A stretch of DNA of 64,000 nt from Ranitomeya imitator. Taxonomy: Eukaryota. A model generated the notes under the pieces. It saw only the letters and a program-made list of their open reading frames with translations. It ran no database searches and was not told where the DNA came from. Numbering within the stretch: position 1 is the stretch's first letter; each line of letters opens with the position of its first letter. Of the stretch, positions 3,719 through 64,000 are shown piece after piece. The stretch spans positions 261,702,001-261,766,000 of the forward strand of contig NC_091282.1 of NCBI RefSeq assembly GCF_032444005.1, read 5' to 3'. Both the position numbers and the translations under genes were made by a program.

Positions 3719-3799
3719 TATAATGCACCAGATTGTCCTCAATATAGTATAATGCACTCCCCATAGGCCTACTTTATATTGTATAATGCACCCCCCATA

Positions 3800-4830
3800 G
3801 GCAAACTCTATAGCACAAGGCAGCACCCCATAGGCAGACCCTGTAGAATAAAGTAGCACCCCACAGGCAGACCCTGCAGTATAAAGCAGCACCCCTATAG
3901 GCAGACCCTGTAGTATAAGACAGTATCCCTATAGGCAGACCCTGTACTATAAGGCAGCACCCCAATAGGCAAAACCTGTAGTATAAGACAGTACCCCCAT
4001 AGGCAGATCCTGTAGTATAAGACAGCACCCCCCATAGGCAGACCCTGTAGTATAAGGCAGACCCCCCATAGGCAGACCCTGTAGTATAAGACAAACCCCC
4101 ATTGGCAGACCCTGTAGTATTAGGCAGACCTCCCACAAAGGCAGACCCTGTAGTATTAGGCAGACCCCCACATAGGCAGACCCTGTAGTATTAGGCAGAC
4201 CCCCCATAGGCAGACCCTGCAGTATTATGCAGACCCCCATAGGCAGATGCTGTAGTATTAGGCAGGCCCCCATAGGCAGACCCTGTAGTATTAGGCAGAC
4301 CCCCATAGGCAGACCCTGTAGTATTAGGCAGACCCCCATAGGCAGACCCTGTAGTATTAGGCAGACCCTGTAGTATTAGGCAGACCCCCCAAAGGCAGAC
4401 CCTGTATAATAAGGCAGACCCCCCTCAGGCAGACCCTGTAGTATTAGGCAGACCCCCCAAAGGCAGACCCTGTATAATAAGGCAGACCCCCCTCAGGCAG
4501 ACCCTGTAGTATTAGGCAGGCCCCCATAGGCAGACCCTGTAGTATTAGGCAGACCCCCATAGGCAGACCCTGTAGTATTAGGCAGACCCCCCATAGCAGA
4601 CCCTGTAGTATTAGGCAGACCCCCCATAGGTAGACCCTGTAGTATTAGGCAGACTTCCCACAAAGGCAGACCCTGTAGTATTAGGCACACCCCCACATAG
4701 GCAGACCCTGTAGTATTAGGCAGACCCCCCATAGGCAGACCGTGTAGTATTAGGCAGACCCCCACATAGGCAGACCCTGTAGTATTAGGCAGACCCCCCA
4801 TAGGCAGATTCTGTAGTATAAGGTAGAACC
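3800..4830. repeat. Minisatellite, about 33-bp unit (ataggcagaccctgtagtattaggcagaccccc)
   Basis: Direct tandem array visible in the sequence; source of the spurious GGLPNTTGSA ORFs. Confidence 0.95.
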
Positions 4831-5929
4831 CCTTAAAAAAATAAAAAAATGCTCACCTCTCCTCTTCCTGGTTCATGCGCTGCTGAGCTCCCTCTCGTCT
4901 CAGTGCTGGGCAGTGACTCATCGTGTCCACTGTCAGCGTCGCTGATGTCAGATGCTGACAGGGGGATGCTGGGGGAAGGAGCGCAGTGCTTCTTCCCTCA
5001 TCATTGCGGTCAGCTGCATCGGCTAAATGCTGGTACAGATGACCATGCGATGACAGGCTGGGGACCCACTGCTGGCACCGGGCCCCCTCGCCTGCTCAGG
5101 GGCCCCATAGCGGCCAGCAGCAGAGCAGGGAGATCAATTCTCCCTGCTCTGCAGCAGAAGATAGCTGTATCGGCGCGCTGCGCACGTTGATACAGTTACA
5201 GTAGCATAGCTCCGGATGGGCCCCCACAGAGCCAGAGGCGCCCGCTCCCTCTGCCCCCCCCCCGGTAGCTACCCTACCGGGAAGACATAAACTTTTTTTT
5301 TCTGGATCAATTTAGATTTTGGCTGAAAAAACTGAATACAAATTGTAGTGGCATTAAAAAATAATACACTTCTTGTGAAAGCCGAATTAGGTTAAGTTGA
5401 GGAATTTAGCCTTTACACATGGCCATTATATCTCTATGCGAGCCATAACAGCCATCCCTGTATGCATACTTTTACAAAGAAAGCGGTCAATCAATGATAA
5501 GACCACCCACTGGACCCAGAAAGATCAGATGATTAAATGATAGAAACACAGGTTAAACTGAATCTTTTCTCGCAAAATTTTATAAAATCAAGCTACTCTG
5601 CTCCCCCTGCTTTATAACATGATGCTTGCAGATTGGACTGCATTCTCATGGTGACTTGTTTCCTTTAAAGTTTTGACCAATCTGCTTTTTGCCAAGGGAA
5701 CTACTGTAGAATCGGTACTGCTGAGGGCCAGTAATTGATGAGGTTTCTATCACCATTGTATAATGGGCTGGGTGGTGGAACTGCTGTGCCATGGACCAAG
5801 GAAAGCCTGGAGGGGCATGACTAAGAGCCTCACCTAATCTGACCTCAGATACACAGCTGCATATGATATCATGATCTGAAAGAGGTGGACTAGGCGCTAC
5901 ACCAGGACTGACCTTGGGTAGATGACAAC

Positions 5930-24467: not shown

Positions 24468-26212
24468 CTGAGGTATGGCTAGGGTTTTGGTTCGGGGGGT
24501 GAAGCTTCTGAGTAGCCCCTAACCAGGTATGAGTAGCCCCTAACCAGGTAACCTTGAATACAACTCGGTGACGCACCCTAATAGTGGAGGAGAACTTCAG
24601 CAGATGATTGCGCTATTACTGAAGATAATCTCTATATAAAGACCAACATGGATATTACCACCATATGGTCAGTGGTAGATACCAGTTCTACAGAACACAG
24701 ATAATGTCTTACCGCTGACGTTCTTTATGATGGAGTTGTCACTTTTCCCGTCTTTTCCATCTGGCCCAGACCGACATGACAACTTCTTCCAGCAATAACT
24801 CACCTGCAGAGATTACAAAAAAGACACATTTCACTTCTCACATTCCAGCCCCATCACCATCTATTCACAACCTACACAACTTCCTCATCCTACTGATACC
24901 CCAATACTGAGCCGCTGCTGCCGTATGTGTCCCTATTACTGCCCCTGATACCCTAATGCTGAGCTGCTGCTGCCGTATGTGTCCCTATTACTGCACCTGA
25001 TACCCCAATACTGATCTGCTGCTGCCATATGTGTCCCTATTACTGCACCCGATACCCCAATACTGAGCCACTGCTGCCGTATGTGTCCCTATTACTGCCC
25101 CTGATTCCCCAATACTGAGCCGCTGCTGCCACATGTGTCCCTATTACTGCACCTGCTGTGTGGTTTTGTGTGCCCTCTAAATTCTAAGGCACCCCTCTAT
25201 AATATAGTAATGCCGGGTACAAGTACCCTAGAAAACAGAGCCCACATTTTGCCCCCTAGAAAGCAATATTGCCCTGTGTGCCCTTTTGATAGTCACAGTA
25301 ACCTGAGTTACGCTATAACAATAAGTGCCAACTTTACATTTAATAATGTTCCGAGTCTCCCCCTGTACAGCTCCCCTATACACAGCATGATGCTCTCTTA
25401 TACACAGTATACTGACCCTTTAGTAGCCTCCAAACTGTTTGATTGCTCCAACAGTGTAATCCCCACACTGTATGATGCCCCTCTAGATGGCCTCCATGTA
25501 GTATAATGTGCCAGATCATCCTCAATATAGTATAATGCACCACATAGTCCTTAATATAGTATAATGTACCAGATAGTCCTCAATATAGTATAATGCACTC
25601 CCCATAGGCCTACTCTATATTGTATAATGCACCCCCCATAGGCAGACTCTATAGCACAAAGTAGCACCCCAGAGGCAGACCCTGTAGTATAAAGCAGCAC
25701 CCCCATAGGCAGACTTTGTAGTATAAGACAACACCCCCCATAGGCAGATTCTGTAGTATAAGGCAGCACCCCTTAAAAAAATAAATAAATACTCACCTCT
25801 CTTCTTCCTGGTTCCTGCGCTGCTCCCGCTGATCTCCTTACAGCGGGCCCGGGTAGTGACGTCATCGCACCCGCTGTCAGTGTCGGTGACGTCAGATGTC
25901 GACTCTGACAGGGGGATGATGGGAGAAGGAGTGCAGCGCTCGTTCCCTCATCATTGCAGTCAGCTGTGTCGGCTAAATGCTGGTACAGTTGACCCTGTGA
26001 TGACAGGCGGAGGGCCCACTGCTGGCACCGGGCCCCCCGCCTGCTCAGGGGCCCCATAGTGGCAGAGCAGGGAGATCGATTCTCCCTGCTCTGCCACAGA
26101 AGGCAACTGTATCGACTACAGTTACAGTAGCATAGCTCCATTTGGGCCCCCTCTGAGCTCCGGGCCCGGGCGTCCGCACCCTCTGCCCCCCGGTAGCTAC
26201 GCTACGCTACTG
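24468..26212. mobile_element. Non-autonomous hAT element, sibling of 986-5279, without the CR1
   Basis: Colinear similarity throughout; TIR ctgaggtatggcta / tagctacgctac...tg; decayed 8-bp TSD AGTTGGAC / AGCTGGAT (6 of 8). Confidence 0.8.
24895..25160. repeat. Minisatellite, about 50-bp unit (ctgataccccaatactgagccgctgctgccgtatgtgtccctattactgccc)
   Basis: About five tandem copies, versus a single copy at about 1415-1470 in the sibling element. Confidence 0.9.
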
Positions 26213-30335: not shown

Positions 30336-30469
30336 AACTACAGCTAATAAAAGCTGTAATAAAGCACAACTACAGTTTACACCGGCGATGTGCTGCTGAG
30401 AACAAGGATTTCTGTTCCCACATAAACAATCCAATCACTCGATGAATAGGCAGCATTTTGCTTGTTTAG

Positions 30470-31345
30470 TATAATACACCCCATAGTCCTCCATATATTA
30501 TAATGTGCACCTCAGTCCTCCATATAGTATAATACACTCCTCAGTCCTCCATATAGTATAATACACTCCTCATAATGTTCCATATATTATTATGCACCGC
30601 CATAGTCATGCATGAAGTACAATACACTTCCCATAGTATAATGCACCCCATAGTTCTTCATATAGTATAATGTATTCCCCATAGTCCTCGATACAGTATA
30701 ATGCAGCCCACAAATAGTATAATGATGCCACCCCAGAGTATAATGCAGCAACCCCACAGAATATATTGTAGCCCTGAGTATAATGTAACCCGCCAGAGAA
30801 TATAATGCAGCCCCATCATATAGTATAATGCAGCCCCTGCATATATAATATATGGTAGCCCCCTCATAGAGCATAATGCAGCCCCCCATAGAATATAATG
30901 TAGCCCCTCCATAGAATACAATGCCGCCCTCCTTATATAGTATAATGCAGCTCCCCATAGAATGTAATGTGCCCCCTCATAGAATATGATGCAATCACCC
31001 CTCATAGAATATAATAAATTTAATACATAGAATAAATTTAATATAAAATATAATACAGCCCGCCTCCCCATAGAATATAATGTTGCCCCATAAAAGAGTA
31101 TGATGCAATCCTCCCTCATAGAATGTAATACAGCCCCCCATAGAATATAATACAACCCCCATAGAATGTAATACAGCCCCCCATAGAATGTAATACAGCC
31201 CCCCCATAGAATGTAATACAGCCCCAATAGAATGTAATACAGCCCCCCATAGAATATAATAAAATCCCCATACAATGTAATATAGCCCCCATAGAATGTA
31301 ATACAGCCCCCCATAGAATGTAATGTAGCGCCCCCAATAGCCCCA
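30470..31345. repeat. Minisatellite, about 21-23-bp unit (cccccatagaatgtaatacagc)
   Basis: Direct tandem array; source of the spurious GLYYILWG ORFs. Confidence 0.9.
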
Positions 31346-57937: not shown

Positions 57938-58890
57938 TTTTGTAGCTCCACATGAATGTAATATTTGTGTGTATATTAGGTGAGATTCTTAAATTGGAGA
58001 GTAGACACGGAACAGAACCCATGATGGTAAATTATCTTTTGACAACTTCACAGAAAAAATCCCCAGTGTAAACTAGATAAAAAATACCTTTATTAATTAA
58101 TTAAAACTTATAATAATAAGTGCACTTCACATAAACCATCACCATGACAACAACATAAAATAGAAAAGACCAGGGTGATGCCTAGCCCTGTACTGCACTA
58201 CCTGCACCCTACCTACCAGCGGAGGTTGGCACCCTAAAGACCTGCGCAATTGGCGCCCCCGCTCACCGTCGACTATCCCTTCTACCCCTATTGGGCCCTA
58301 ATAGGACGGGATGAAAATACATACACAGTCATACAAAAGTGCTATAATATGATGGAGAAACAGGGGGAGTCTATATTGCTACCTGCTCTTCCCCTACCTC
58401 TCAGCGGAGGTTGGCACCCTATGATAGTACGTGGCGCCCCCGCTCAACGACGACTGTACACTAAACTGTCCCTTTTTTAGATGTTTCGGGAGATAAACTA
58501 CTGTATGTATAGTAAAGTGCTGTAGTGCTTGTAAACCATGTCTAAACACACTCCACAGGTTTAAATATACTTGTATGGATTCTCTTTATATATATATATA
58601 GCGCTCATTCATAAACCAGGTACTCCAGACAAAGTGAAGTTTGATATACACAAGATGTAAATAATCAGTGTTCATCAAGATAAACCTGATGCACCGATTG
58701 AACACCCAAATACCTAGTCCAAACCCACTAGGCAGAATCCCCAGTCAGGCCACAAACAAAAAAACACAGTCAGTCGGTACCTTTGTTATAGAGAATCCCT
58801 ACATAACAACCATTTGGGTCACCCCAATACCCTACTAATGTATATATATAAACACCATTAGTATATTCTCAAACAAAGCCTCCCTTGTAG

Positions 58891-58935
58891 ACTCGACGCG
58901 TTTCCCCTCACTGTTACATGAGGTTCATCAGGAGT
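58891..58935 (-). ncRNA. Minimal type I hammerhead ribozyme motif of the PLE
   Basis: Minus strand reads ACUC-CUGAUGA-A-CCUCA(UGUAACAG)UGAGG-G-GAAA-CGCG-UC-GAGU: complete core, 4-bp stem I, 5-bp stem II, palindromic ACGCGU stem III, GUC cleavage triplet. Confidence 0.85.
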
Positions 58936-59071
58936 AAAACACGATAATAAGGGGTTACTTAGCTTGTATTAGATGTCAAAACCGAAACCGATACATGGTA
59001 TAGCATCCCAGGGCTCCAGGGCAGATCCCCTCTTGATATGGCGCCTCGAAAGAAGTGCTAAAGTGTATGCG

Positions 59072-59340
59072 CTTTATACCTTGCTTTTAGATTGTGCCAC
59101 CCACCTTGTAGCTCTGCGTACATGCCGGTATAGACTTCCGGTAAACTCTCGGCGTTCCGGATGTGATCACATCACACAAGGGACTCCAGTGTGATGTGCG
59201 CATGCGCAGAAATCTCGCGCACGCGCTGACGCTCAAGCGTTCCACAGATGCGTTCCAGTTGCTGCGCTTGCGTGGTAAAACGTCCCCACAACTGTACCAG
59301 CGTTATACAAAGGCACTATGGAGACTACGCATGCGTCCCC
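59072..59340 (-). promoter_or_regulatory. Candidate internal (pseudo-LTR) Pol II promoter of the PLE
   Basis: CpG-rich patch; perfect NRF1 palindrome TGCGCATGCGCA (59197-59208); second CGCATGCG near 59328-59335; two TTCCGG ETS-like cores at about 59135-59160; TATAAAG on the minus strand at 59072-59078, about 140 nt upstream of the hammerhead. Motif-level evidence only. Confidence 0.45.
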
Positions 59341-59805
59341 CTCAATATGGATCCAGCGATCTGTAGACATATCGAAAGCACTGTGCCGGCGCAACCCACA
59401 TATGTATGGGAAGCGCTAGCACCGCACTACAAACCAAGAGCTGAGGTACCACAACTGACACAGATGTAGAAGGTACCGTGTTACCAATGCTGCAGACATA
59501 GATAATGATAAAAATATGATTAAACCATAACCCATAGAAATAGCCGATAGACTTATTGCAACCATACCTTAATATCACAATTTAGGCTTTTACTACCCAT
59601 ATTTACACTATACATCTCTAAGCGCATATCACTACTAAATCTCATTATAATTCATGTGTCCGGGAATATATTTCCACAACACACAGTTAGATGCAGTATC
59701 TCAAAATTGAGATCAGTGAATATATATTTATACAGGTTTGTCCCATTAGGAACAATACTGCAGGAGAAAAATCAGGTGACCAATATTTTATCAACAGGGA
59801 ATAAT

Positions 59806-62340
59806 TTACAGATAACACCCAAAGTTCATCTGTTCATTGAGTCCCCTAGGGAAAACCGTGTCCAACCTATGGATCCATTTCAACTCCTTCTGTAGAATGG
59901 TCCTATCCCAATTTCCACCCCGAACTGATGGGGCCACAACCTCCACTGCACAGAAAGAAAAGGAACTGAGGTCACCCTGGTGAACATCACGAATATGTCT
60001 AGATACGGGAGTGTCCCTAGCATGCCTGATGTCACCCAGGTGTTCACCTATCCTTCTTCTCAGTTCTCTTTTAGTTTTTCCCACATAGTTCTTTGGGCAG
60101 GCACACTTAAAAAGATATATCAAACCACTCGTTTTGCAATTAGCAAAATGTCTGGTCTCAAAAACTCGACCTGTACTAGCACTGGAGAAATGTTTACCCG
60201 TAGAAATATACCCACAGAAGGAACATCCACCACATCTAAAAGTACCCATCTGTCTTTTGTCAAGCCAAGTACCACTCTTTCTTGGGGGGGTAAAAGTGCT
60301 GTGCACCAATTGATCCCTCAATGACCTCCCCCTTTTATAGGTAATGGTCGGTGTTCCTGGTAAAAATTCATGAATGTCAGTGTCTGCCAACAAGATATCC
60401 CAGTGCCTGCCGATAATATCTCTCACCTCCCGGGAACAGTCATCAAAGTTACCTATGAGTCTTACAATGGAGTCAGATTCTACCTTGCTCTTAGATTGTA
60501 ACAGGCTGCTTCTTGGGATTTTTTCTACATACTTAAATGTATCCCGAAGGATATTATTGGGGTAACCCCTTTCACGGAATCTATTTCTCAGGTTTCTCGT
60601 TTCAACGTAAAAGGATGAGTCCGTGGAGCAATTTCTCCTTGCCCTCATATATTGACCTTTGGGTATTCCCCTTCTGAGCCCATAGGGATGATGACTGCTC
60701 CATCTGAGCAGATTGTTAGTAGAGGTCGGCTTCCTGTATATTGCGGTTTCCAGGCGACCTTCCTTATCCTTACTGATAGTAACATCCAGGAAGTTAATTT
60801 TTTCTTTATCAATCTCAGCTGTAAACCTTAGGCCAATGTCATTCTTATTCAAACCCTCTATGAAGGTGTTGAAAGAAATAGTGTCGCCTGTCCACAAAAT
60901 CAGAACATCATCTATATATCGCCCCCAGAATAGTATCTGGGGGCACCACCAAGATGACCTCCCTTCATCAAAAACCACGGTATCCTCCCACCAGCCCAGG
61001 AGCAAATTGGCATAGGTAGGAGCACATGAGCTACCCATAGCCGTGCCCCTGAGCTGGTGGTAAAATTTGCCGTCAAAAAGAAAATAATTGTGGGTCAACA
61101 TAAAATTTAATAGGCGACCTATGAACCGGTTATGCTCCACAAACTGAATCCCCTTAGTTTTTAGAAAATAATCAACAGCTTGCAAGCCTGCATCATGAGG
61201 GATACTGCTGTATAAGGCTTCCACATCAATAGATGCTAGCCATGTATCCTCCCCAACTGTGATATCCTCTATTTTTAATAAGAGATCAGCAGTGTCTCGT
61301 ATATATGAAGGCAGAGCAATAACAAATTCACGTAAGACTTTATCAATGTAGATGCCACAATTCTGTGAGATTGAGTCATTACCCGAAACTATCGGTCGTC
61401 CCCTCAAAGGTACCAGCCCCTTATGTACCTTTGGCAAGGCATAGAATACAGGTATTGTTGGTGTTTTTTGTACCATAAAGTCCCTTTCGTTCTTTGATAT
61501 TAGCCCCTGTGTCAGAGCCTCATCTAATAAATAGACAAGTTCAGAGTTAAACCTATCAGTAGGATCCTTCCTCAAGAGTCCATATGTTGACTCGTCCTTT
61601 AATATTTTAAGACACATATCTCTATAATTGTCACAGTCCAGGATCACGAGGTTACCCCCCTTATCCGAAGGTTTAAACACCAGCTCCTTCTTTTTTGATA
61701 GAGCATCAAGGGCCCTCCTTTCACATGATGTTAAATTTGACATATTGCTCTTCTTTTTGGCACCTAGTCTCTTGAAATCAGTCAATACCAACTGTGTAAA
61801 TATATCTATACTGGTGTTTATAGACAAGGGGGGCATCCTCGTGCTTCCAGGTTTGAGTTTAGTAAAAGGACCCATGCCCATTGGTCTCATACCTTCCTCC
61901 AACATATCTGTCAGAATTCTTACATCAGATAGTTCAGTTATGTCAATACCCAAACTTAGGCACTCAGCTTGATCATGACTCTTGAAGAATTTTTTCCACT
62001 TTAGTTTGCGAGCAAACAGATTAATATCCTTCACCCACTCAAACTCATCGAACCTATTAGTCGGGACAAAACCTAAACCTTTATCAAGGACTCTCTTTTC
62101 TACATCCGACAAGGTATAAGATGATAAATTAATAATGCTGTTATCATTATTTCCTTTTCTTAGTACCGGGGAGTTCCCAGTCGCTCCCTTAATTGGTAGG
62201 GGAGCCCTCGTCTCTCTAAAAAAGTGGAAGCAGAGGGCACAGTTGAGGACCCAGATGTACCAGAATGACCCGGATAAGGTGGTTGATAGCCCATTCCACC
62301 TCTTGGTGCACCATATCTCTTTTTTGTATTCCTTCCCCAT
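59806..62340 (-). CDS. Penelope-like RT/GIY-YIG endonuclease ORF, uninterrupted (844 aa)
   Basis: IINLSSYTLSDVEKRVLDKGLGFVP, FKPSDKGG, FYALPKVHK, RPIVS, SIDVEALY, GTAMGS, RYIDD, FLDV, IYRKPT, CGGCSFC, GLIY...YVGKT, R..EH, E..WI..L. The true N-terminus may derive from the upstream frame. Confidence 0.96.
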   Translation of the reverse strand: MGKEYKKEIWCTKRWNGLSTTLSGSFWYIWVLNCALCFHFFRETRAPLPIKGATGNSPVLRKGNNDNSIINLSSYTLSDVEKRVLDKGLGFVPTNRFDEFEWVKDINLFARKLKWKKFFKSHDQAECLSLGIDITELSDVRILTDMLEEGMRPMGMGPFTKLKPGSTRMPPLSINTSIDIFTQLVLTDFKRLGAKKKSNMSNLTSCERRALDALSKKKELVFKPSDKGGNLVILDCDNYRDMCLKILKDESTYGLLRKDPTDRFNSELVYLLDEALTQGLISKNERDFMVQKTPTIPVFYALPKVHKGLVPLRGRPIVSGNDSISQNCGIYIDKVLREFVIALPSYIRDTADLLLKIEDITVGEDTWLASIDVEALYSSIPHDAGLQAVDYFLKTKGIQFVEHNRFIGRLLNFMLTHNYFLFDGKFYHQLRGTAMGSSCAPTYANLLLGWWEDTVVFDEGRSSWWCPQILFWGRYIDDVLILWTGDTISFNTFIEGLNKNDIGLRFTAEIDKEKINFLDVTISKDKEGRLETAIYRKPTSTNNLLRWSSHHPYGLRRGIPKGQYMRARRNCSTDSSFYVETRNLRNRFRERGYPNNILRDTFKYVEKIPRSSLLQSKSKVESDSIVRLIGNFDDCSREVRDIIGRHWDILLADTDIHEFLPGTPTITYKRGRSLRDQLVHSTFTPPRKSGTWLDKRQMGTFRCGGCSFCGYISTGKHFSSASTGRVFETRHFANCKTSGLIYLFKCACPKNYVGKTKRELRRRIGEHLGDIRHARDTPVSRHIRDVHQGDLSSFSFCAVEVVAPSVRGGNWDRTILQKELKWIHRLDTVFPRGLNEQMNFGCYL

Positions 62341-62446
62341 CTCTCTCTACGGGGTCTGAAAACTGGACTGGTATTATTACTTCCCAGATACCTAGAGGAC
62401 CCACTTTTTTCACTATCTGATGTCTCAATGTCTGATGATGATACAC
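62160..62446 (-). CDS. C-terminal remnant of an upstream basic, Ser/Arg/Gly-rich ORF of the PLE, overlapping the RT ORF
   Basis: VSSSDIETSDSEKSGSSRYLGSNNTSPVFRPRRERWGRNTKKRYGAPRGGMGYQPPYPG...ASTFLERRGLPYQLRERLGTPRY*; open to the 5' truncation point. The RT ORF is in the -1 frame relative to it. Confidence 0.6.
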
Positions 62447-62886
62447 TCATCTCTCTCTACGGGGTCTGAAAACTGGACTGGTATTATTACTTCCCAGATA
62501 CCTAGAGGACCCACTTTTTTCACTATCTGATGTCTCAATGTCTGATGATGATACACCCATCTCTCTCTACGGGGTCTGAAAACTGGACTGGTATTATTAC
62601 TTCCCAGATACCTAGAGGACCCACTTTTTTCACTATCTGATGTCTCAATGTCTGATGATGATACACGCATCTCTCTCTACGGGGTCTGAAAACTGGACTG
62701 GTATTATTACTTCCCAGATACCTAGAGGACCCACTTTTTTCACTATCTGATGTCTCAATGTCTGATGATGATACACCCATCTCTCTCTACGGGGTCTGAA
62801 AACTGGACTGGTATTATTACTTCCCAGATACCTAGAGGACCCACTTTTTTCACTATCTGATGTCTCAATGTCTGATGATGATACAC
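62338..62886. repeat. Five identical 109-nt units (110-nt period) at the PLE 5' truncation point
   Basis: Units start at 62338, 62448, 62558, 62668 and 62778; joining bases are T (62447), C (62557), G (62667) and C (62777). Confidence 0.98.
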
Positions 62887-62889
62887 ACA

Positions 62890-64000
62890 CTGGGGGCGAT
62901 ATATAGATGATGTTCTGATTTTGTGGACAGGCGACACTATTTCTTTCAACACCTTCATAGAGGGTTTGAATAAGAATGACATTGGCCTAAGGTTTACAGC
63001 TGAGATTGATAAAGAAAAAATTAACTTCCTGGATGTTACTATCAGTAAGGATAAGGAAGGTCGCCTGGAAACCGCAATATACAGGGAGCCGACCTCTACT
63101 AACAATCTGCTCAGATGGAGCAGTCATCATCCCTATGGGCTCAGAAGGGGAATACCCAAAGGTCAATATATGAGGGCAAGGAGAAATTGCTCCACGGACT
63201 CATCCTTTTACGTTGAAACGAGAAACCTGAGAAATAGATTCCGTGAAAGGGGTTACCCCAATAATATCCTTCGGGATACATTTAAGTATGTAGAAAAAAT
63301 CCCAAGAAGCAGCCTGTTACAATCTAAGAGCAAGGTAGAATCTGACTCCATTGTAAGACTCATAGGTAACTTTGATGACTGTTCCCGGGAGGTGAGAGAT
63401 ATTATCGGCAGGCACTGGGATATCTTGTTGGCAGACACTGACATTCATGAATTTTTACCAGGAACACCGACCATTACCTATAAAAGGGGGAGGTCATTGA
63501 GGGATCAATTGGTGCACAGCACTTTTACCCCCCCAAGAAAGAGTGGTACTTGGCTTGACAAAAGACAGATGGGTACTTTTAGATGTGGTGGATGTTCCTT
63601 CTGTGGGTATATTTCTACGGGTAAACATTTCTCCAGTGCTAGTACAGGTCGAGTTTTTGAGACCAGACATTTTGCTAATTGCAAAACGAGTGGTTTGATA
63701 TATCTTTTTAAGTGTGCCTGCCCAAAGAACTATGTGGGAAAAACTAAAAGAGAACTGAGAAGAAGGATAGGTGAACACCTGGGTGACATCAGGCATGCTA
63801 GGGACACTCCCGTATCTAGACATATTCGTGATGTTCACCAGGGTGACCTCAGTTCCTTTTCTTTCTGTGCAGTGGAGGTTGTGGCCCCATCAGTTCGGGG
63901 TGGAAATTGGGATAGGACCATTCTACAGAAGGAGTTGAAATGGATCCATAGGTTGGACACGGTTTTCCCTAGGGGACTCAATGAACAGATGAACTTTGGG
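62890..64000 (+). mobile_element. Inverted copy of the PLE 3' portion (RT motif C to GIY-YIG), running off the window
   Basis: Reverse complement of 59818-60928 (1111 bp); only one substitution noticed (AAG to GAG near 63086). Confidence 0.97.

What the first reader, a model, noticed from the sequence alone, without database searches (positions are those of the whole stretch)
62338..62890. Five exact 109-nt re-copies joined by a variable single base: possible record of reiterative, telomerase-like template jumping by a Penelope RT
Seen: where the minus-strand PLE is 5'-truncated, the last 109 nt are repeated five times with no mismatch inside the units. The single base linking units differs (T, C, G, C), and the last unit is followed by ACA before the inverted arm. 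Slippage, unequal crossover or rolling-circle copying of a circle would propagate one fixed junction, and later mutation hitting only the junction position is implausible. Established: PLE RTs are the sister group of telomerase RTs, and non-LTR/group II intron RTs add non-templated nucleotides and jump templates on reaching a 5' end. Inference: first-strand cDNA, read left to right here, ran off the RNA 5' end at ...GATACAC, gained one untemplated base, and re-engaged four times at the same register 109 nt back (or on a discrete 109-nt RNA fragment). That would be repeat-addition-like behaviour with a fixed long template. I am not aware of this being described for GIY-YIG PLEs but cannot search the literature.
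Basis: partly seen in the sequence, partly recalled or inferred. Interest (0 to 1): 0.85.

Follow-up and report, generated by a model that had tools for sequence, protein, structure and literature searches.

The report
Five-fold recopied end of a Penelope insertion
Inside one very young frog retrotransposon insertion, the enzyme that copies RNA into DNA seems to have copied the same last 109 letters five times, putting one unpredictable letter at each join; this looks like a rare natural trace of how that enzyme acts at the end of its template, but it is a single case that no independent reads confirm.

Summary
There are five identical 109-nt units at 62338-62886, period 110, with linker bases T, C, G, C. 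The array is followed by ACA and an inverted arm (62890-64000) that differs from 59818-60928 at one base in 1111. Mutation cannot explain three changes in one column and none elsewhere (p about 4e-5).

The array sits at the 5' break of an otherwise intact minus-strand Penelope-like element with an 844-aa RT/GIY-YIG ORF. The unit is internal to the family's ORF1. Other genomic copies read straight through it, so about 0.7 kb of 5' sequence is missing here.

Donor and acceptor share no homology, and no ribozyme was found. This argues against telomerase-style realignment.

Best reading (0.45): serial end-to-end template jumps. Each jump carries one overhang nucleotide and lands back on the same terminal RNA piece, before a last switch creates the inverted arm.

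The unit starts with GU, and reverse transcriptases are known to misread a 2'-5' branch nucleotide in about 70% of reads. The branch and polypyrimidine signals are poor, however.

Public read-derived contigs are too fragmented to confirm or refute the junctions. The scan had noted this same stretch once before. Interest is moderate: one locus, a new variant of known PLE behaviour.

The parts
59806..62340 (-). Intact 844-aa RT plus C-terminal GIY-YIG ORF of the Penelope-like element. Its first ATG (62340-62338) is the first three bases of unit 1.
   Evidence: ORF list. Pfam RVT_1 scores 23.2 bits (below cutoff) and GIY-YIG 22.7 bits (at cutoff). The ORF is 52% identical over 92% of its length to frog PLE-type proteins.
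62160..62450 (-). C-terminal part of the family's ORF1 frame, running from the array into the body. The U_UUU_UUA slippery site is at 62223-62217, ahead of the RT frame.
   Evidence: ORF list. It aligns to residues 188-296 of the 300-aa ORF1 of related transcript contig L001.
62337..62337 (-). C on the + strand immediately before unit 1. This is the position that the variable linker occupies in later rounds (acceptor -1 or putative branch nucleotide; G in the RNA).
   Evidence: The family contig shows the same base (record 7 with 0 other letters).
62338..62446 (-). Unit 1 (109 nt), continuous with the element body. In sense it reads GTGTATC...GAGAGAGATG.
62447..62447 (-). Linker 1 = T, the same as the family's next templated base.
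62448..62556 (-). Unit 2, identical to unit 1.
62557..62557 (-). Linker 2 = C.
62558..62666 (-). Unit 3, identical to unit 1.
62667..62667 (-). Linker 3 = G.
62668..62776 (-). Unit 4, identical to unit 1.
62777..62777 (-). Linker 4 = C.
62778..62886 (-). Unit 5, identical to unit 1.
62887..62889 (-). ACA. This is either a fifth linker (A) plus the first two bases (CA) of a sixth round, or three untemplated bases.
62890..64000 (+). Inverted, 5'-truncated second arm of the same element, starting in the YIDD region of the RT. It is cut off by the window end.
   Evidence: It is the inverted repeat of 59818-60928, 1111 nt with one mismatch at 60732/63086.

Best explanation
The array is a by-product of one Penelope-like element integration. 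It is neither a functional part of the element nor the result of later mutation. First-strand cDNA, read left to right on the + strand, copied a 5'-shortened element RNA up to its end at ...GATACAC. The reverse transcriptase then added one overhang nucleotide and jumped end-to-end onto a 3' end lying 109-110 nt back. The most economical acceptor is the same terminal RNA piece, separated from the rest of the template by a single nick and still tethered to the fresh cDNA. The enzyme recopied that piece, and this happened four or five times. The overhang nucleotide sits opposite the acceptor's terminal G. That keeps the period at exactly 110 and makes that single column vary: C twice (paired), T once (wobble), G and A once each (mismatched). 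Finally the enzyme switched onto the opposite cDNA or onto its own cDNA, producing the inverted arm that is typical of this element class. Shown here: the anatomy, the identity of the units, the lack of homology at the joins, the truncation and the inverted arm. Inferred: the nick, the tethered fragment, the one-nucleotide overhang rule for this particular enzyme, and the claim that everything occurred in a single event.
For: The five units are exact, the linkers vary and there are no indels. The whole insertion is very young: 0 changes in 545 unit bases and 1 in 1111 between the arms. The variable column therefore arose at synthesis, with p about 4e-5 for mutation. The array lies exactly at the 5' break, next to the inverted arm, which is where first-strand synthesis ends in the known PLE architecture (PMC8557442). 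A purified PLE protein cleaves and extends both target strands and starts reverse transcription without primer-template homology (PMC11167929). Group II intron RT switches end-to-end best from a 1-nt overhang opposite the acceptor's 3' nucleotide and makes serial switches (10.1101/792986). R2 RT needs untemplated addition to jump (PMC8857657). Donor and acceptor share at most 1 nt, as expected for end-to-end jumps rather than homology-driven slippage. Other family copies lack the array, so it is not a native part of the element.
Against: Template jumping has not been shown for any PLE RT. The model needs two unobserved RNA ends, one at 62446 and one at 62337/62338. Three of five overhang nucleotides would be mismatched, whereas the group II enzyme discriminates against mismatches. 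If the CA after the last linker is templated, the last jump left the template after only 2 nt. No second example could be examined. The junction words were not found in independent read-derived contigs.
Confidence: 0.45

Rival explanations
1. Rolling-circle reverse transcription of a lariat intermediate. A cryptic first splicing step joined the G of GUGUAUC (62446) by a 2'-5' bond to the G at 62337, releasing the upstream ORF1 exon. The RT came up the 3' tail and copied the branch G correctly (C at 62337). It then went round the 110-nt circle five times, misreading the branched nucleotide on each 2'-5' crossing (T, C, G, C, A). It left the circle 2 nt into a sixth round.
For: The topology alone predicts four features: a homology-free fixed register, exactly one variable base per round, continuity with the downstream body and loss of the 5' part. 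The unit begins with GU in sense. The expected copy C appears in 2 of 5 rounds, a 60% error rate, against 70.4% mismatches at branch nucleotides in lariat reads (PMC4315302). G and C branchpoints occur and resist debranching, giving stable cytoplasmic lariats (PMC6879206). An AG lies 18-19 nt after the putative branch. PLEs are known to retain introns, which suggests their templates can be unspliced RNA (PMC8557442).
Against: The 5' splice site context CAA|GUGUAU fits the consensus only at -3, -2, +3 and +6. The branch context GAUG[G]GGAAG is not yUnAy apart from U at -2. The stretch before the AG is A-rich rather than a polypyrimidine tract (consensus from general knowledge). In the related contig L001 the GU at this position is simply a valine codon. 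The related transcript contig and the family contigs run through the region unspliced. Ordinary RTs stop at a branch when arriving from the 3' tail and cross 2'-5' bonds inefficiently, so six passes demand an unusual enzyme.
Confidence: 0.25
2. DNA-level repair synthesis. The two cDNA or target ends were joined by a host polymerase (for example theta-mediated end joining or break-induced template switching) that copied the same 109-nt flank repeatedly.
For: The array lies at the join between the two arms, where host repair must act. Iterative templated insertions are a known repair signature (general knowledge).
Against: Such insertions depend on microhomology and are usually short and patchy. 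Here there are five full 109-nt copies with identical ends and at most 1 nt of homology.
Confidence: 0.08
3. The array already existed in the template, either in a particular source copy or as a native repeat of the family, and was simply inherited.
For: Some PLE families carry internal tandem repeats (PMC8557442). Only one copy of this family is visible in the window.
Against: Contigs from other genomic copies read through the unit into upstream ORF1 sequence without any unit-to-unit join, and junction words are absent from them. The array shifts the ORF1 reading frame, since 110 is not a multiple of 3. A promoterless truncated copy is an unlikely source. Even if true, this only moves the same question back by one generation.
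Confidence: 0.07
4. Assembly or consensus artefact: the true locus has fewer units or identical linkers.
For: No independent read support could be obtained. PLE tandem and inverted structures are known to trouble assemblies (PMC8557442).
Against: A 550-bp array is far shorter than a long read. Sequencing or polishing errors would not hit one column of an otherwise perfect array with three different bases in an identical sequence context.
Confidence: 0.05

Closest known systems
Canonical endonuclease-positive Penelope-like elements with complex tandem/inverted insertions (Penelope/Poseidon/Neptune type)
   Same: RT plus C-terminal GIY-YIG, 5' truncation, and an inverted 5'-truncated copy abutting the 5' end (PMC8557442).
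   Different: The known tandems are whole or partial element copies forming pseudo-LTRs. Here a 109-nt internal coding fragment is reiterated five times with a variable linker. No hammerhead ribozyme or pLTR is visible in the window.
Serial end-to-end template jumping by non-LTR-type reverse transcriptases (R2/BoMoC, group II intron RT)
   Same: Homology-free joins, one extra nucleotide per join and several jumps in a row (10.1101/792986; PMC8857657).
   Different: Those ladders are described in vitro with free acceptor molecules. Here the acceptor would be the same 109-110-nt stretch each time, in vivo, and the enzyme is a PLE RT for which jumping has not been demonstrated.
Telomerase repeat addition and DRT2 concatemeric cDNA synthesis
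   Same: One enzyme recopies one fixed template stretch many times. DRT2 uses a template of about 120 nt on a linear RNA (PMC12039810).
   Different: Both of these realign by base pairing between the product end and a redundant template end, giving exact joins. Here there is no terminal redundancy and an extra variable base is inserted.
cDNA reads across lariat branchpoints, and rolling-circle cDNA from circular RNAs
   Same: There is a single error-prone nucleotide at the point of closure, the join pairs the 5' splice-site G with sequence upstream of a branch, and circles yield concatemers (PMC4315302; PMC6879206).
   Different: Those are laboratory cDNAs. A genomic insertion carrying such a concatemer has, to my knowledge, not been reported, and the splice signals here are poor.
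Animal retrozymes (hammerhead-bearing tandem repeats mobilised by PLEs)
   Same: Short tandem units laid down in the PLE tandem-plus-inverted pattern (10.64898/2026.07.22.740005; earlier notes on this genome).
   Different: There is no ribozyme in the unit. The unit is a piece of ORF1 coding sequence, and its joins vary.

Membership tests
Penelope-like element (endonuclease-positive, canonical) | Reverse transcriptase of PLE type | tested here: met
   RVT_1 scores 23.2 bits (below the Pfam cutoff) and a YIDD motif is present. The ORF is 52% identical over 92% of its length to frog proteins carrying PF00078, PF28514 and PF26215.
Penelope-like element (endonuclease-positive, canonical) | C-terminal GIY-YIG endonuclease | tested here: met
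   PF01541 scores 22.7 bits against a cutoff of 22.6, at residues 739-777.
Penelope-like element (endonuclease-positive, canonical) | Inverted 5'-truncated copy adjacent to the 5' end | tested here: met
   The arms 59818-60928 and 62890-64000 differ at 1 of 1111 bases.
Penelope-like element (endonuclease-positive, canonical) | Pseudo-LTR with hammerhead ribozyme, and a target-site duplication | tested here: inconclusive
   There is no Rfam ribozyme hit in 58000-64000. The right end of the insertion lies beyond the window, so the ends and the TSD cannot be seen.
Serial end-to-end template jumping product | Joins without donor-acceptor homology and carrying a few extra nucleotides | tested here: met
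   There is exactly 1 nt at four joins, and shared sequence is at most 1 nt.
Serial end-to-end template jumping product | Donor is a template 5' end and acceptor is a template 3' end | not testable with these tools
   The family RNA continues upstream of the donor, so a shortened or nicked RNA must be assumed. No RNA-end data are available.
Serial end-to-end template jumping product | The enzyme is able to add untemplated bases and to jump | not tested
   The only PLE biochemistry found (PMC11167929) shows homology-independent internal initiation and does not address jumping.
Telomerase-like repeat addition | Realignment by pairing of the product 3' end with a redundant end of the template | tested here: not met
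   The unit ends (...GATACAC and CATCTC...) and their flanks share at most 1 nt, and an extra base is inserted.
Lariat (2'-5' closed) rolling-circle template | The unit starts at a 5' splice site GU | tested here: met
   In sense the unit starts GUGUAU after ...CAA. The context is weak, and in the relative L001 the GU is a Val codon.
Lariat (2'-5' closed) rolling-circle template | Branch-site consensus, polypyrimidine tract and 3' AG | tested here: not met
   The branch context is GAUG[G]GGAAG followed by an A-rich stretch. Only the U at -2 and an AG at +18/19 fit.
Lariat (2'-5' closed) rolling-circle template | A single error-prone nucleotide at the closure | tested here: met
   The linkers T, C, G, C, A compare with an expected C, so 3 of 5 differ. 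The literature figure is 70.4% (PMC4315302).
Retrozyme / ribozyme-bounded circular RNA | Hammerhead or HDV-like ribozyme in each unit | tested here: not met
   No ribozyme family is matched even at E up to 10, on either strand.

The most novel reading that the evidence does not exclude
The array is a genomic fossil of a retroelement reverse transcriptase that entered a lariat splicing intermediate of its own RNA through the 3' tail. It then ran five times round the 110-nt 2'-5'-closed circle, leaving the branch nucleotide as the one misread base per turn. This would be direct in vivo evidence that a retrotransposon RT can use branched RNA as a template. It would bear on the old, unresolved debate about lariat or debranching involvement in retroelement cDNA synthesis, and on why PLEs retain introns.
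Probability: 0.22. Interest if true: 0.8.

Novelty: new variant of a known kind. Interest (0 to 1): 0.5.

Why it matters
How Penelope-like elements finish first-strand synthesis, and how they build their odd tandem and inverted insertions, is unknown. Only one PLE protein has been studied in vitro. Because it is so young, this insertion preserves a base-by-base record of what the polymerase did at the end of its template. It returned to one fixed point about five times without any homology, and each time left exactly one unpredictable base. If the record is genuine and recurrent, it gives a testable rule for PLE RT behaviour in vivo: either a one-nucleotide overhang with end-to-end jumps, or traversal of a branched RNA. 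It would also suggest how the class's tandem multimers and retrozyme arrays could arise. As a single locus without read-level support, it is for now a lead and not a result.

Tried and rejected
1. Ribozyme-defined ends. Rfam at E up to 10 on 58000-64000, and on the array alone, found no hammerhead, HDV-like or other ribozyme. The CTGATGA/GAAA motifs on the + strand do not form a hammerhead stem II.

2. Homology-driven slippage. Donor and acceptor share at most 1 nt. A GGGAAGG direct repeat flanks the unit, but it would give a 121-nt period rather than 110.

3. Structure-driven positioning. The unit RNA fold (z = -1.07) and the upstream hairpin (z = -1.07) are no better than shuffled sequences.

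4. Re-initiation at the family's canonical internal RT start site. Neither the unit nor any ORF1 5' part recurs at the element's 3' side within the window. The insertion's outer ends are not visible, so this stays open.

5. CpG decay or mutation. The spectrum includes transversions, and p is about 4e-5.

6. Read-level confirmation. Logan contigs of four runs show no unit-to-unit bridge and only unit-internal words, but they are too fragmented to decide.

7. Other copies. No second copy lies in the window. The nearest database proteins are only 52-63% identical. The scan's notes list no other array of this kind.

8. Microhomology at the array-to-arm join. GATAC occurs on both sides but is out of register by one base.
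Full report
**What is there**

TRF reports a single array at 62336-62886 with period 110, 5.0 copies, 99% matches and no indels. Reading the sequence and comparing the units by script gives five 109-nt units. They lie at 62338-62446, 62448-62556, 62558-62666, 62668-62776 and 62778-62886, and they are identical to one another. The units are joined by T (62447), C (62557), G (62667) and C (62777). The base before unit 1 is C (62337). After unit 5 come A, C, A (62887-62889). Probes from both ends of the unit hit only these five places in the 64-kb window, against 0 expected by chance.

I add two refinements:
- The CA of the trailing ACA equals the first two bases of a sixth unit.
- The first linker T is the base that the family itself carries at that position (see "The unit is internal to the element").

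**Setting**

The array abuts the first ATG (62340-62338) of an intact 844-aa minus-strand ORF, 59806-62340.
- It is 52% identical over 92% of its length to Penelope-type proteins of dendrobatid and other frogs.
- A second frame runs from the array into the body. It corresponds to the C-terminal third of an ORF1 and is followed by a U_UUU_UUA site at 62223-62217 leading into the RT frame. Earlier notes on this genome describe this layout.

To the right of the array, 62890-64000 is the reverse complement of 59818-60928, with a single mismatch at 60732/63086 in 1111 nt. This is the head-to-head, 5'-truncated inverted copy already described as typical of the class (PMC8557442). The insertion is very young: there are 0 changes in 545 unit bases and 1 in 1111 between the arms.

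**More than chance, and not mutation**

At the arm divergence, about 0.5 substitutions are expected in the whole array. Three substitutions falling in one column of different units, and nowhere else, has a probability of about 4e-5. The changes include transversions and are not CpG-driven. The variable column therefore arose when the array was made.

**The unit is internal to the element**

Contigs from three sequencing runs of the same species (two samples, two studies) run through 62259-62447 without a difference. They then continue with T + TGCCCCTTCCCTTCTCTGGGGAGGGTCTTC on the + strand. In sense, this extends ORF1 upstream as ...EDPPQRREGA|SVSSSD. A related 4.4-kb transcript contig (L001) has a 300-aa ORF1, and the window's fragment aligns to its residues 188-296. 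This copy therefore lacks about 0.7 kb of 5' sequence. The array is absent from other family copies and so is not a native repeat.

**Read support**

This could not be settled.
- Junction-spanning 31-mers make up about 61% of the distinct words in 62417-62917. The best runs hold 0.40 of the sampled words, which is what unit-internal words alone would give.
- No contig bridges two units.
- These contigs average about 66 nt and seem to carry mostly multi-copy sequence, so absence proves nothing.
- An artefact is unlikely on internal grounds, because an identical sequence context receives three different bases. It is not excluded.

**Mechanism: what the sequence constrains**

Any explanation has to account for five features:
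- (a) The same donor and acceptor positions are used in four or five successive rounds.
- (b) There is exactly one base of unpredictable identity at each join.
- (c) There is no homology between the donor end (...GATGATACAC) and the acceptor (...TTCCTTCCC|CATCTC) beyond one C.
- (d) The array is continuous with the downstream body and the upstream part is lost.
- (e) A final switch leads into the inverted arm.

Several candidates fail these tests:
- No ribozyme bounds the unit.
- RNA folds around either end are no better than shuffled sequence.
- Neither the unit nor the ORF1 start recurs at the element's 3' side in the window. I therefore cannot tie the acceptor to the family's normal internal start site for reverse transcription (PMC11167929).

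**Best reading (0.45)**

I favour serial end-to-end template jumps.
- Non-LTR-type reverse transcriptases add untemplated nucleotides at a template's 5' end and then continue on the 3' end of another template without homology.
- The group II intron enzyme does this best from a one-nucleotide overhang placed opposite the acceptor's terminal nucleotide, and it makes several switches in a row (10.1101/792986).
- The R2 enzyme needs untemplated addition in order to jump (PMC8857657).

Suppose the shortened RNA was nicked once, 110 nt from its end. The terminal piece would stay tethered to the fresh cDNA and offer the nearest 3' end. Each recopy would return the enzyme to the same state, which explains the constant register. 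The overhang would lie opposite the terminal G, giving C twice, T once, and G and A once each, and would fix the period at 110. The last switch, onto the opposite or its own cDNA, makes the inverted arm. This fits a PLE protein that cleaves and extends both target strands (PMC11167929).

The weaknesses are:
- Jumping is unproven for PLE reverse transcriptases.
- Two RNA ends have to be assumed.
- Three of five overhangs would be mismatched.

**The 'telomerase-like' label does not hold**

Telomerase, and the bacterial DRT2 enzyme that builds concatemeric cDNA from a roughly 120-nt template (PMC12039810), realign by base pairing at a redundant template end and give exact joins. Here there is no redundancy, and an extra base is inserted at each join.

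That is true only for a normal circle. A lariat intermediate has a circle closed by a 2'-5' bond, with the rest of the RNA attached as a 3' tail. A polymerase coming up the tail would behave as follows:
- It copies the branch nucleotide once through the normal backbone. This gives C at 62337, the family base.
- It enters the circle and meets the same nucleotide again across the 2'-5' bond on every turn.

Reverse transcriptases misread branch nucleotides in 70.4% of lariat-spanning reads (PMC4315302). Here 3 of 5 linkers differ from the expected C. The topology also gives features (a) to (d) without any further assumption.

Points in favour:
- The unit begins with GU in sense.
- An AG lies 18-19 nt beyond the putative branch.
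- G and C branchpoints exist and make lariats resistant to debranching (PMC6879206).
- PLEs are known to retain introns (PMC8557442).

Points against:
- The 5' splice-site context is weak, and the GU is simply a valine codon in the relative L001.
- The branch context is not yUnAy.
- There is no polypyrimidine tract.
- The available contigs are unspliced.
- Ordinary reverse transcriptases stop at branches.

I rank this reading below jumping, but it is the most interesting one that the data allow.

**Other rivals**

- Host repair synthesis (0.08) lacks the microhomology it normally needs.
- Inheritance from a source copy (0.07) is contradicted for the family as a whole, and in any case only moves the question back by one generation.
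- Assembly artefact: 0.05.

**Comparison and novelty**

The element is a member of the canonical endonuclease-positive PLEs. RT, GIY-YIG and the inverted truncated copy were all tested and met; the pLTR, hammerhead and TSD could not be seen. The complex tandem and inverted insertion style is known. Reiteration of a short internal fragment with a one-base variable join at the inversion point is not described in the PLE papers I could read (PMC8557442, PMC3846280, PMC11167929). It also does not appear elsewhere in the scan's notes on this genome. I rate it a new variant of a known kind, of moderate interest (0.5). It is a clean natural record with two testable and informative readings, but it is a single locus without independent read support or a second example.

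Noticed in passing
window 62446-62319 (minus strand): Removing these 128 nt (GU...AG in sense) would join the upstream ORF1 frame (...EDPPQRREGA) directly to the RT frame (KIWCTKRWNGL...). That would bypass the -1 frameshift site. The chance of the frame fitting is 1 in 3, and no spliced form was seen.
   Followed up: partly
window 62223-62217 (minus strand): A U_UUU_UUA heptamer sits where the ORF1 frame overlaps the RT frame. The related transcript contig L001 shows the same ORF1/RT overlap, with a TCTTTTTTA stretch at about 965-973. This candidate -1 frameshift was already noted by others on this genome.
   Followed up: partly
window 60732 / 63086: This is the only difference between the two inverted arms. 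It gives Lys in the left copy and Glu in the right arm. It could be a reverse-transcription error or the first post-insertion mutation.
   Followed up: no
window 62320 (run X5 contig): A 410-nt contig from a run of unrecorded type carries 16 T before 62320, next to the element's A6 run, and then continues 255 nt upstream into ORF1. This looks like oligo-dT internal priming and hints that the family is transcribed.
   Followed up: no
window 62096 -> 62940 (run X1): One contig joins these two points, skipping 843 nt with 5 nt of shared sequence. It may come from another rearranged copy of the family elsewhere in the genome.
   Followed up: no
L001:127-1029 and window 62160-62450: ORF1 of this PLE group (300 aa in L001) has no Pfam match. 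It ends in a Gly/Arg-rich and Ser-rich tail before the frameshift site, so it is an uncharacterised PLE accessory protein.
   Followed up: partly
window 3781-4832, 25595-25772, 30467-31336: There are several degenerate 22-35-bp minisatellite arrays with related CCCCCATAGGCAGAC-type units. They are unrelated to this finding.
   Followed up: no
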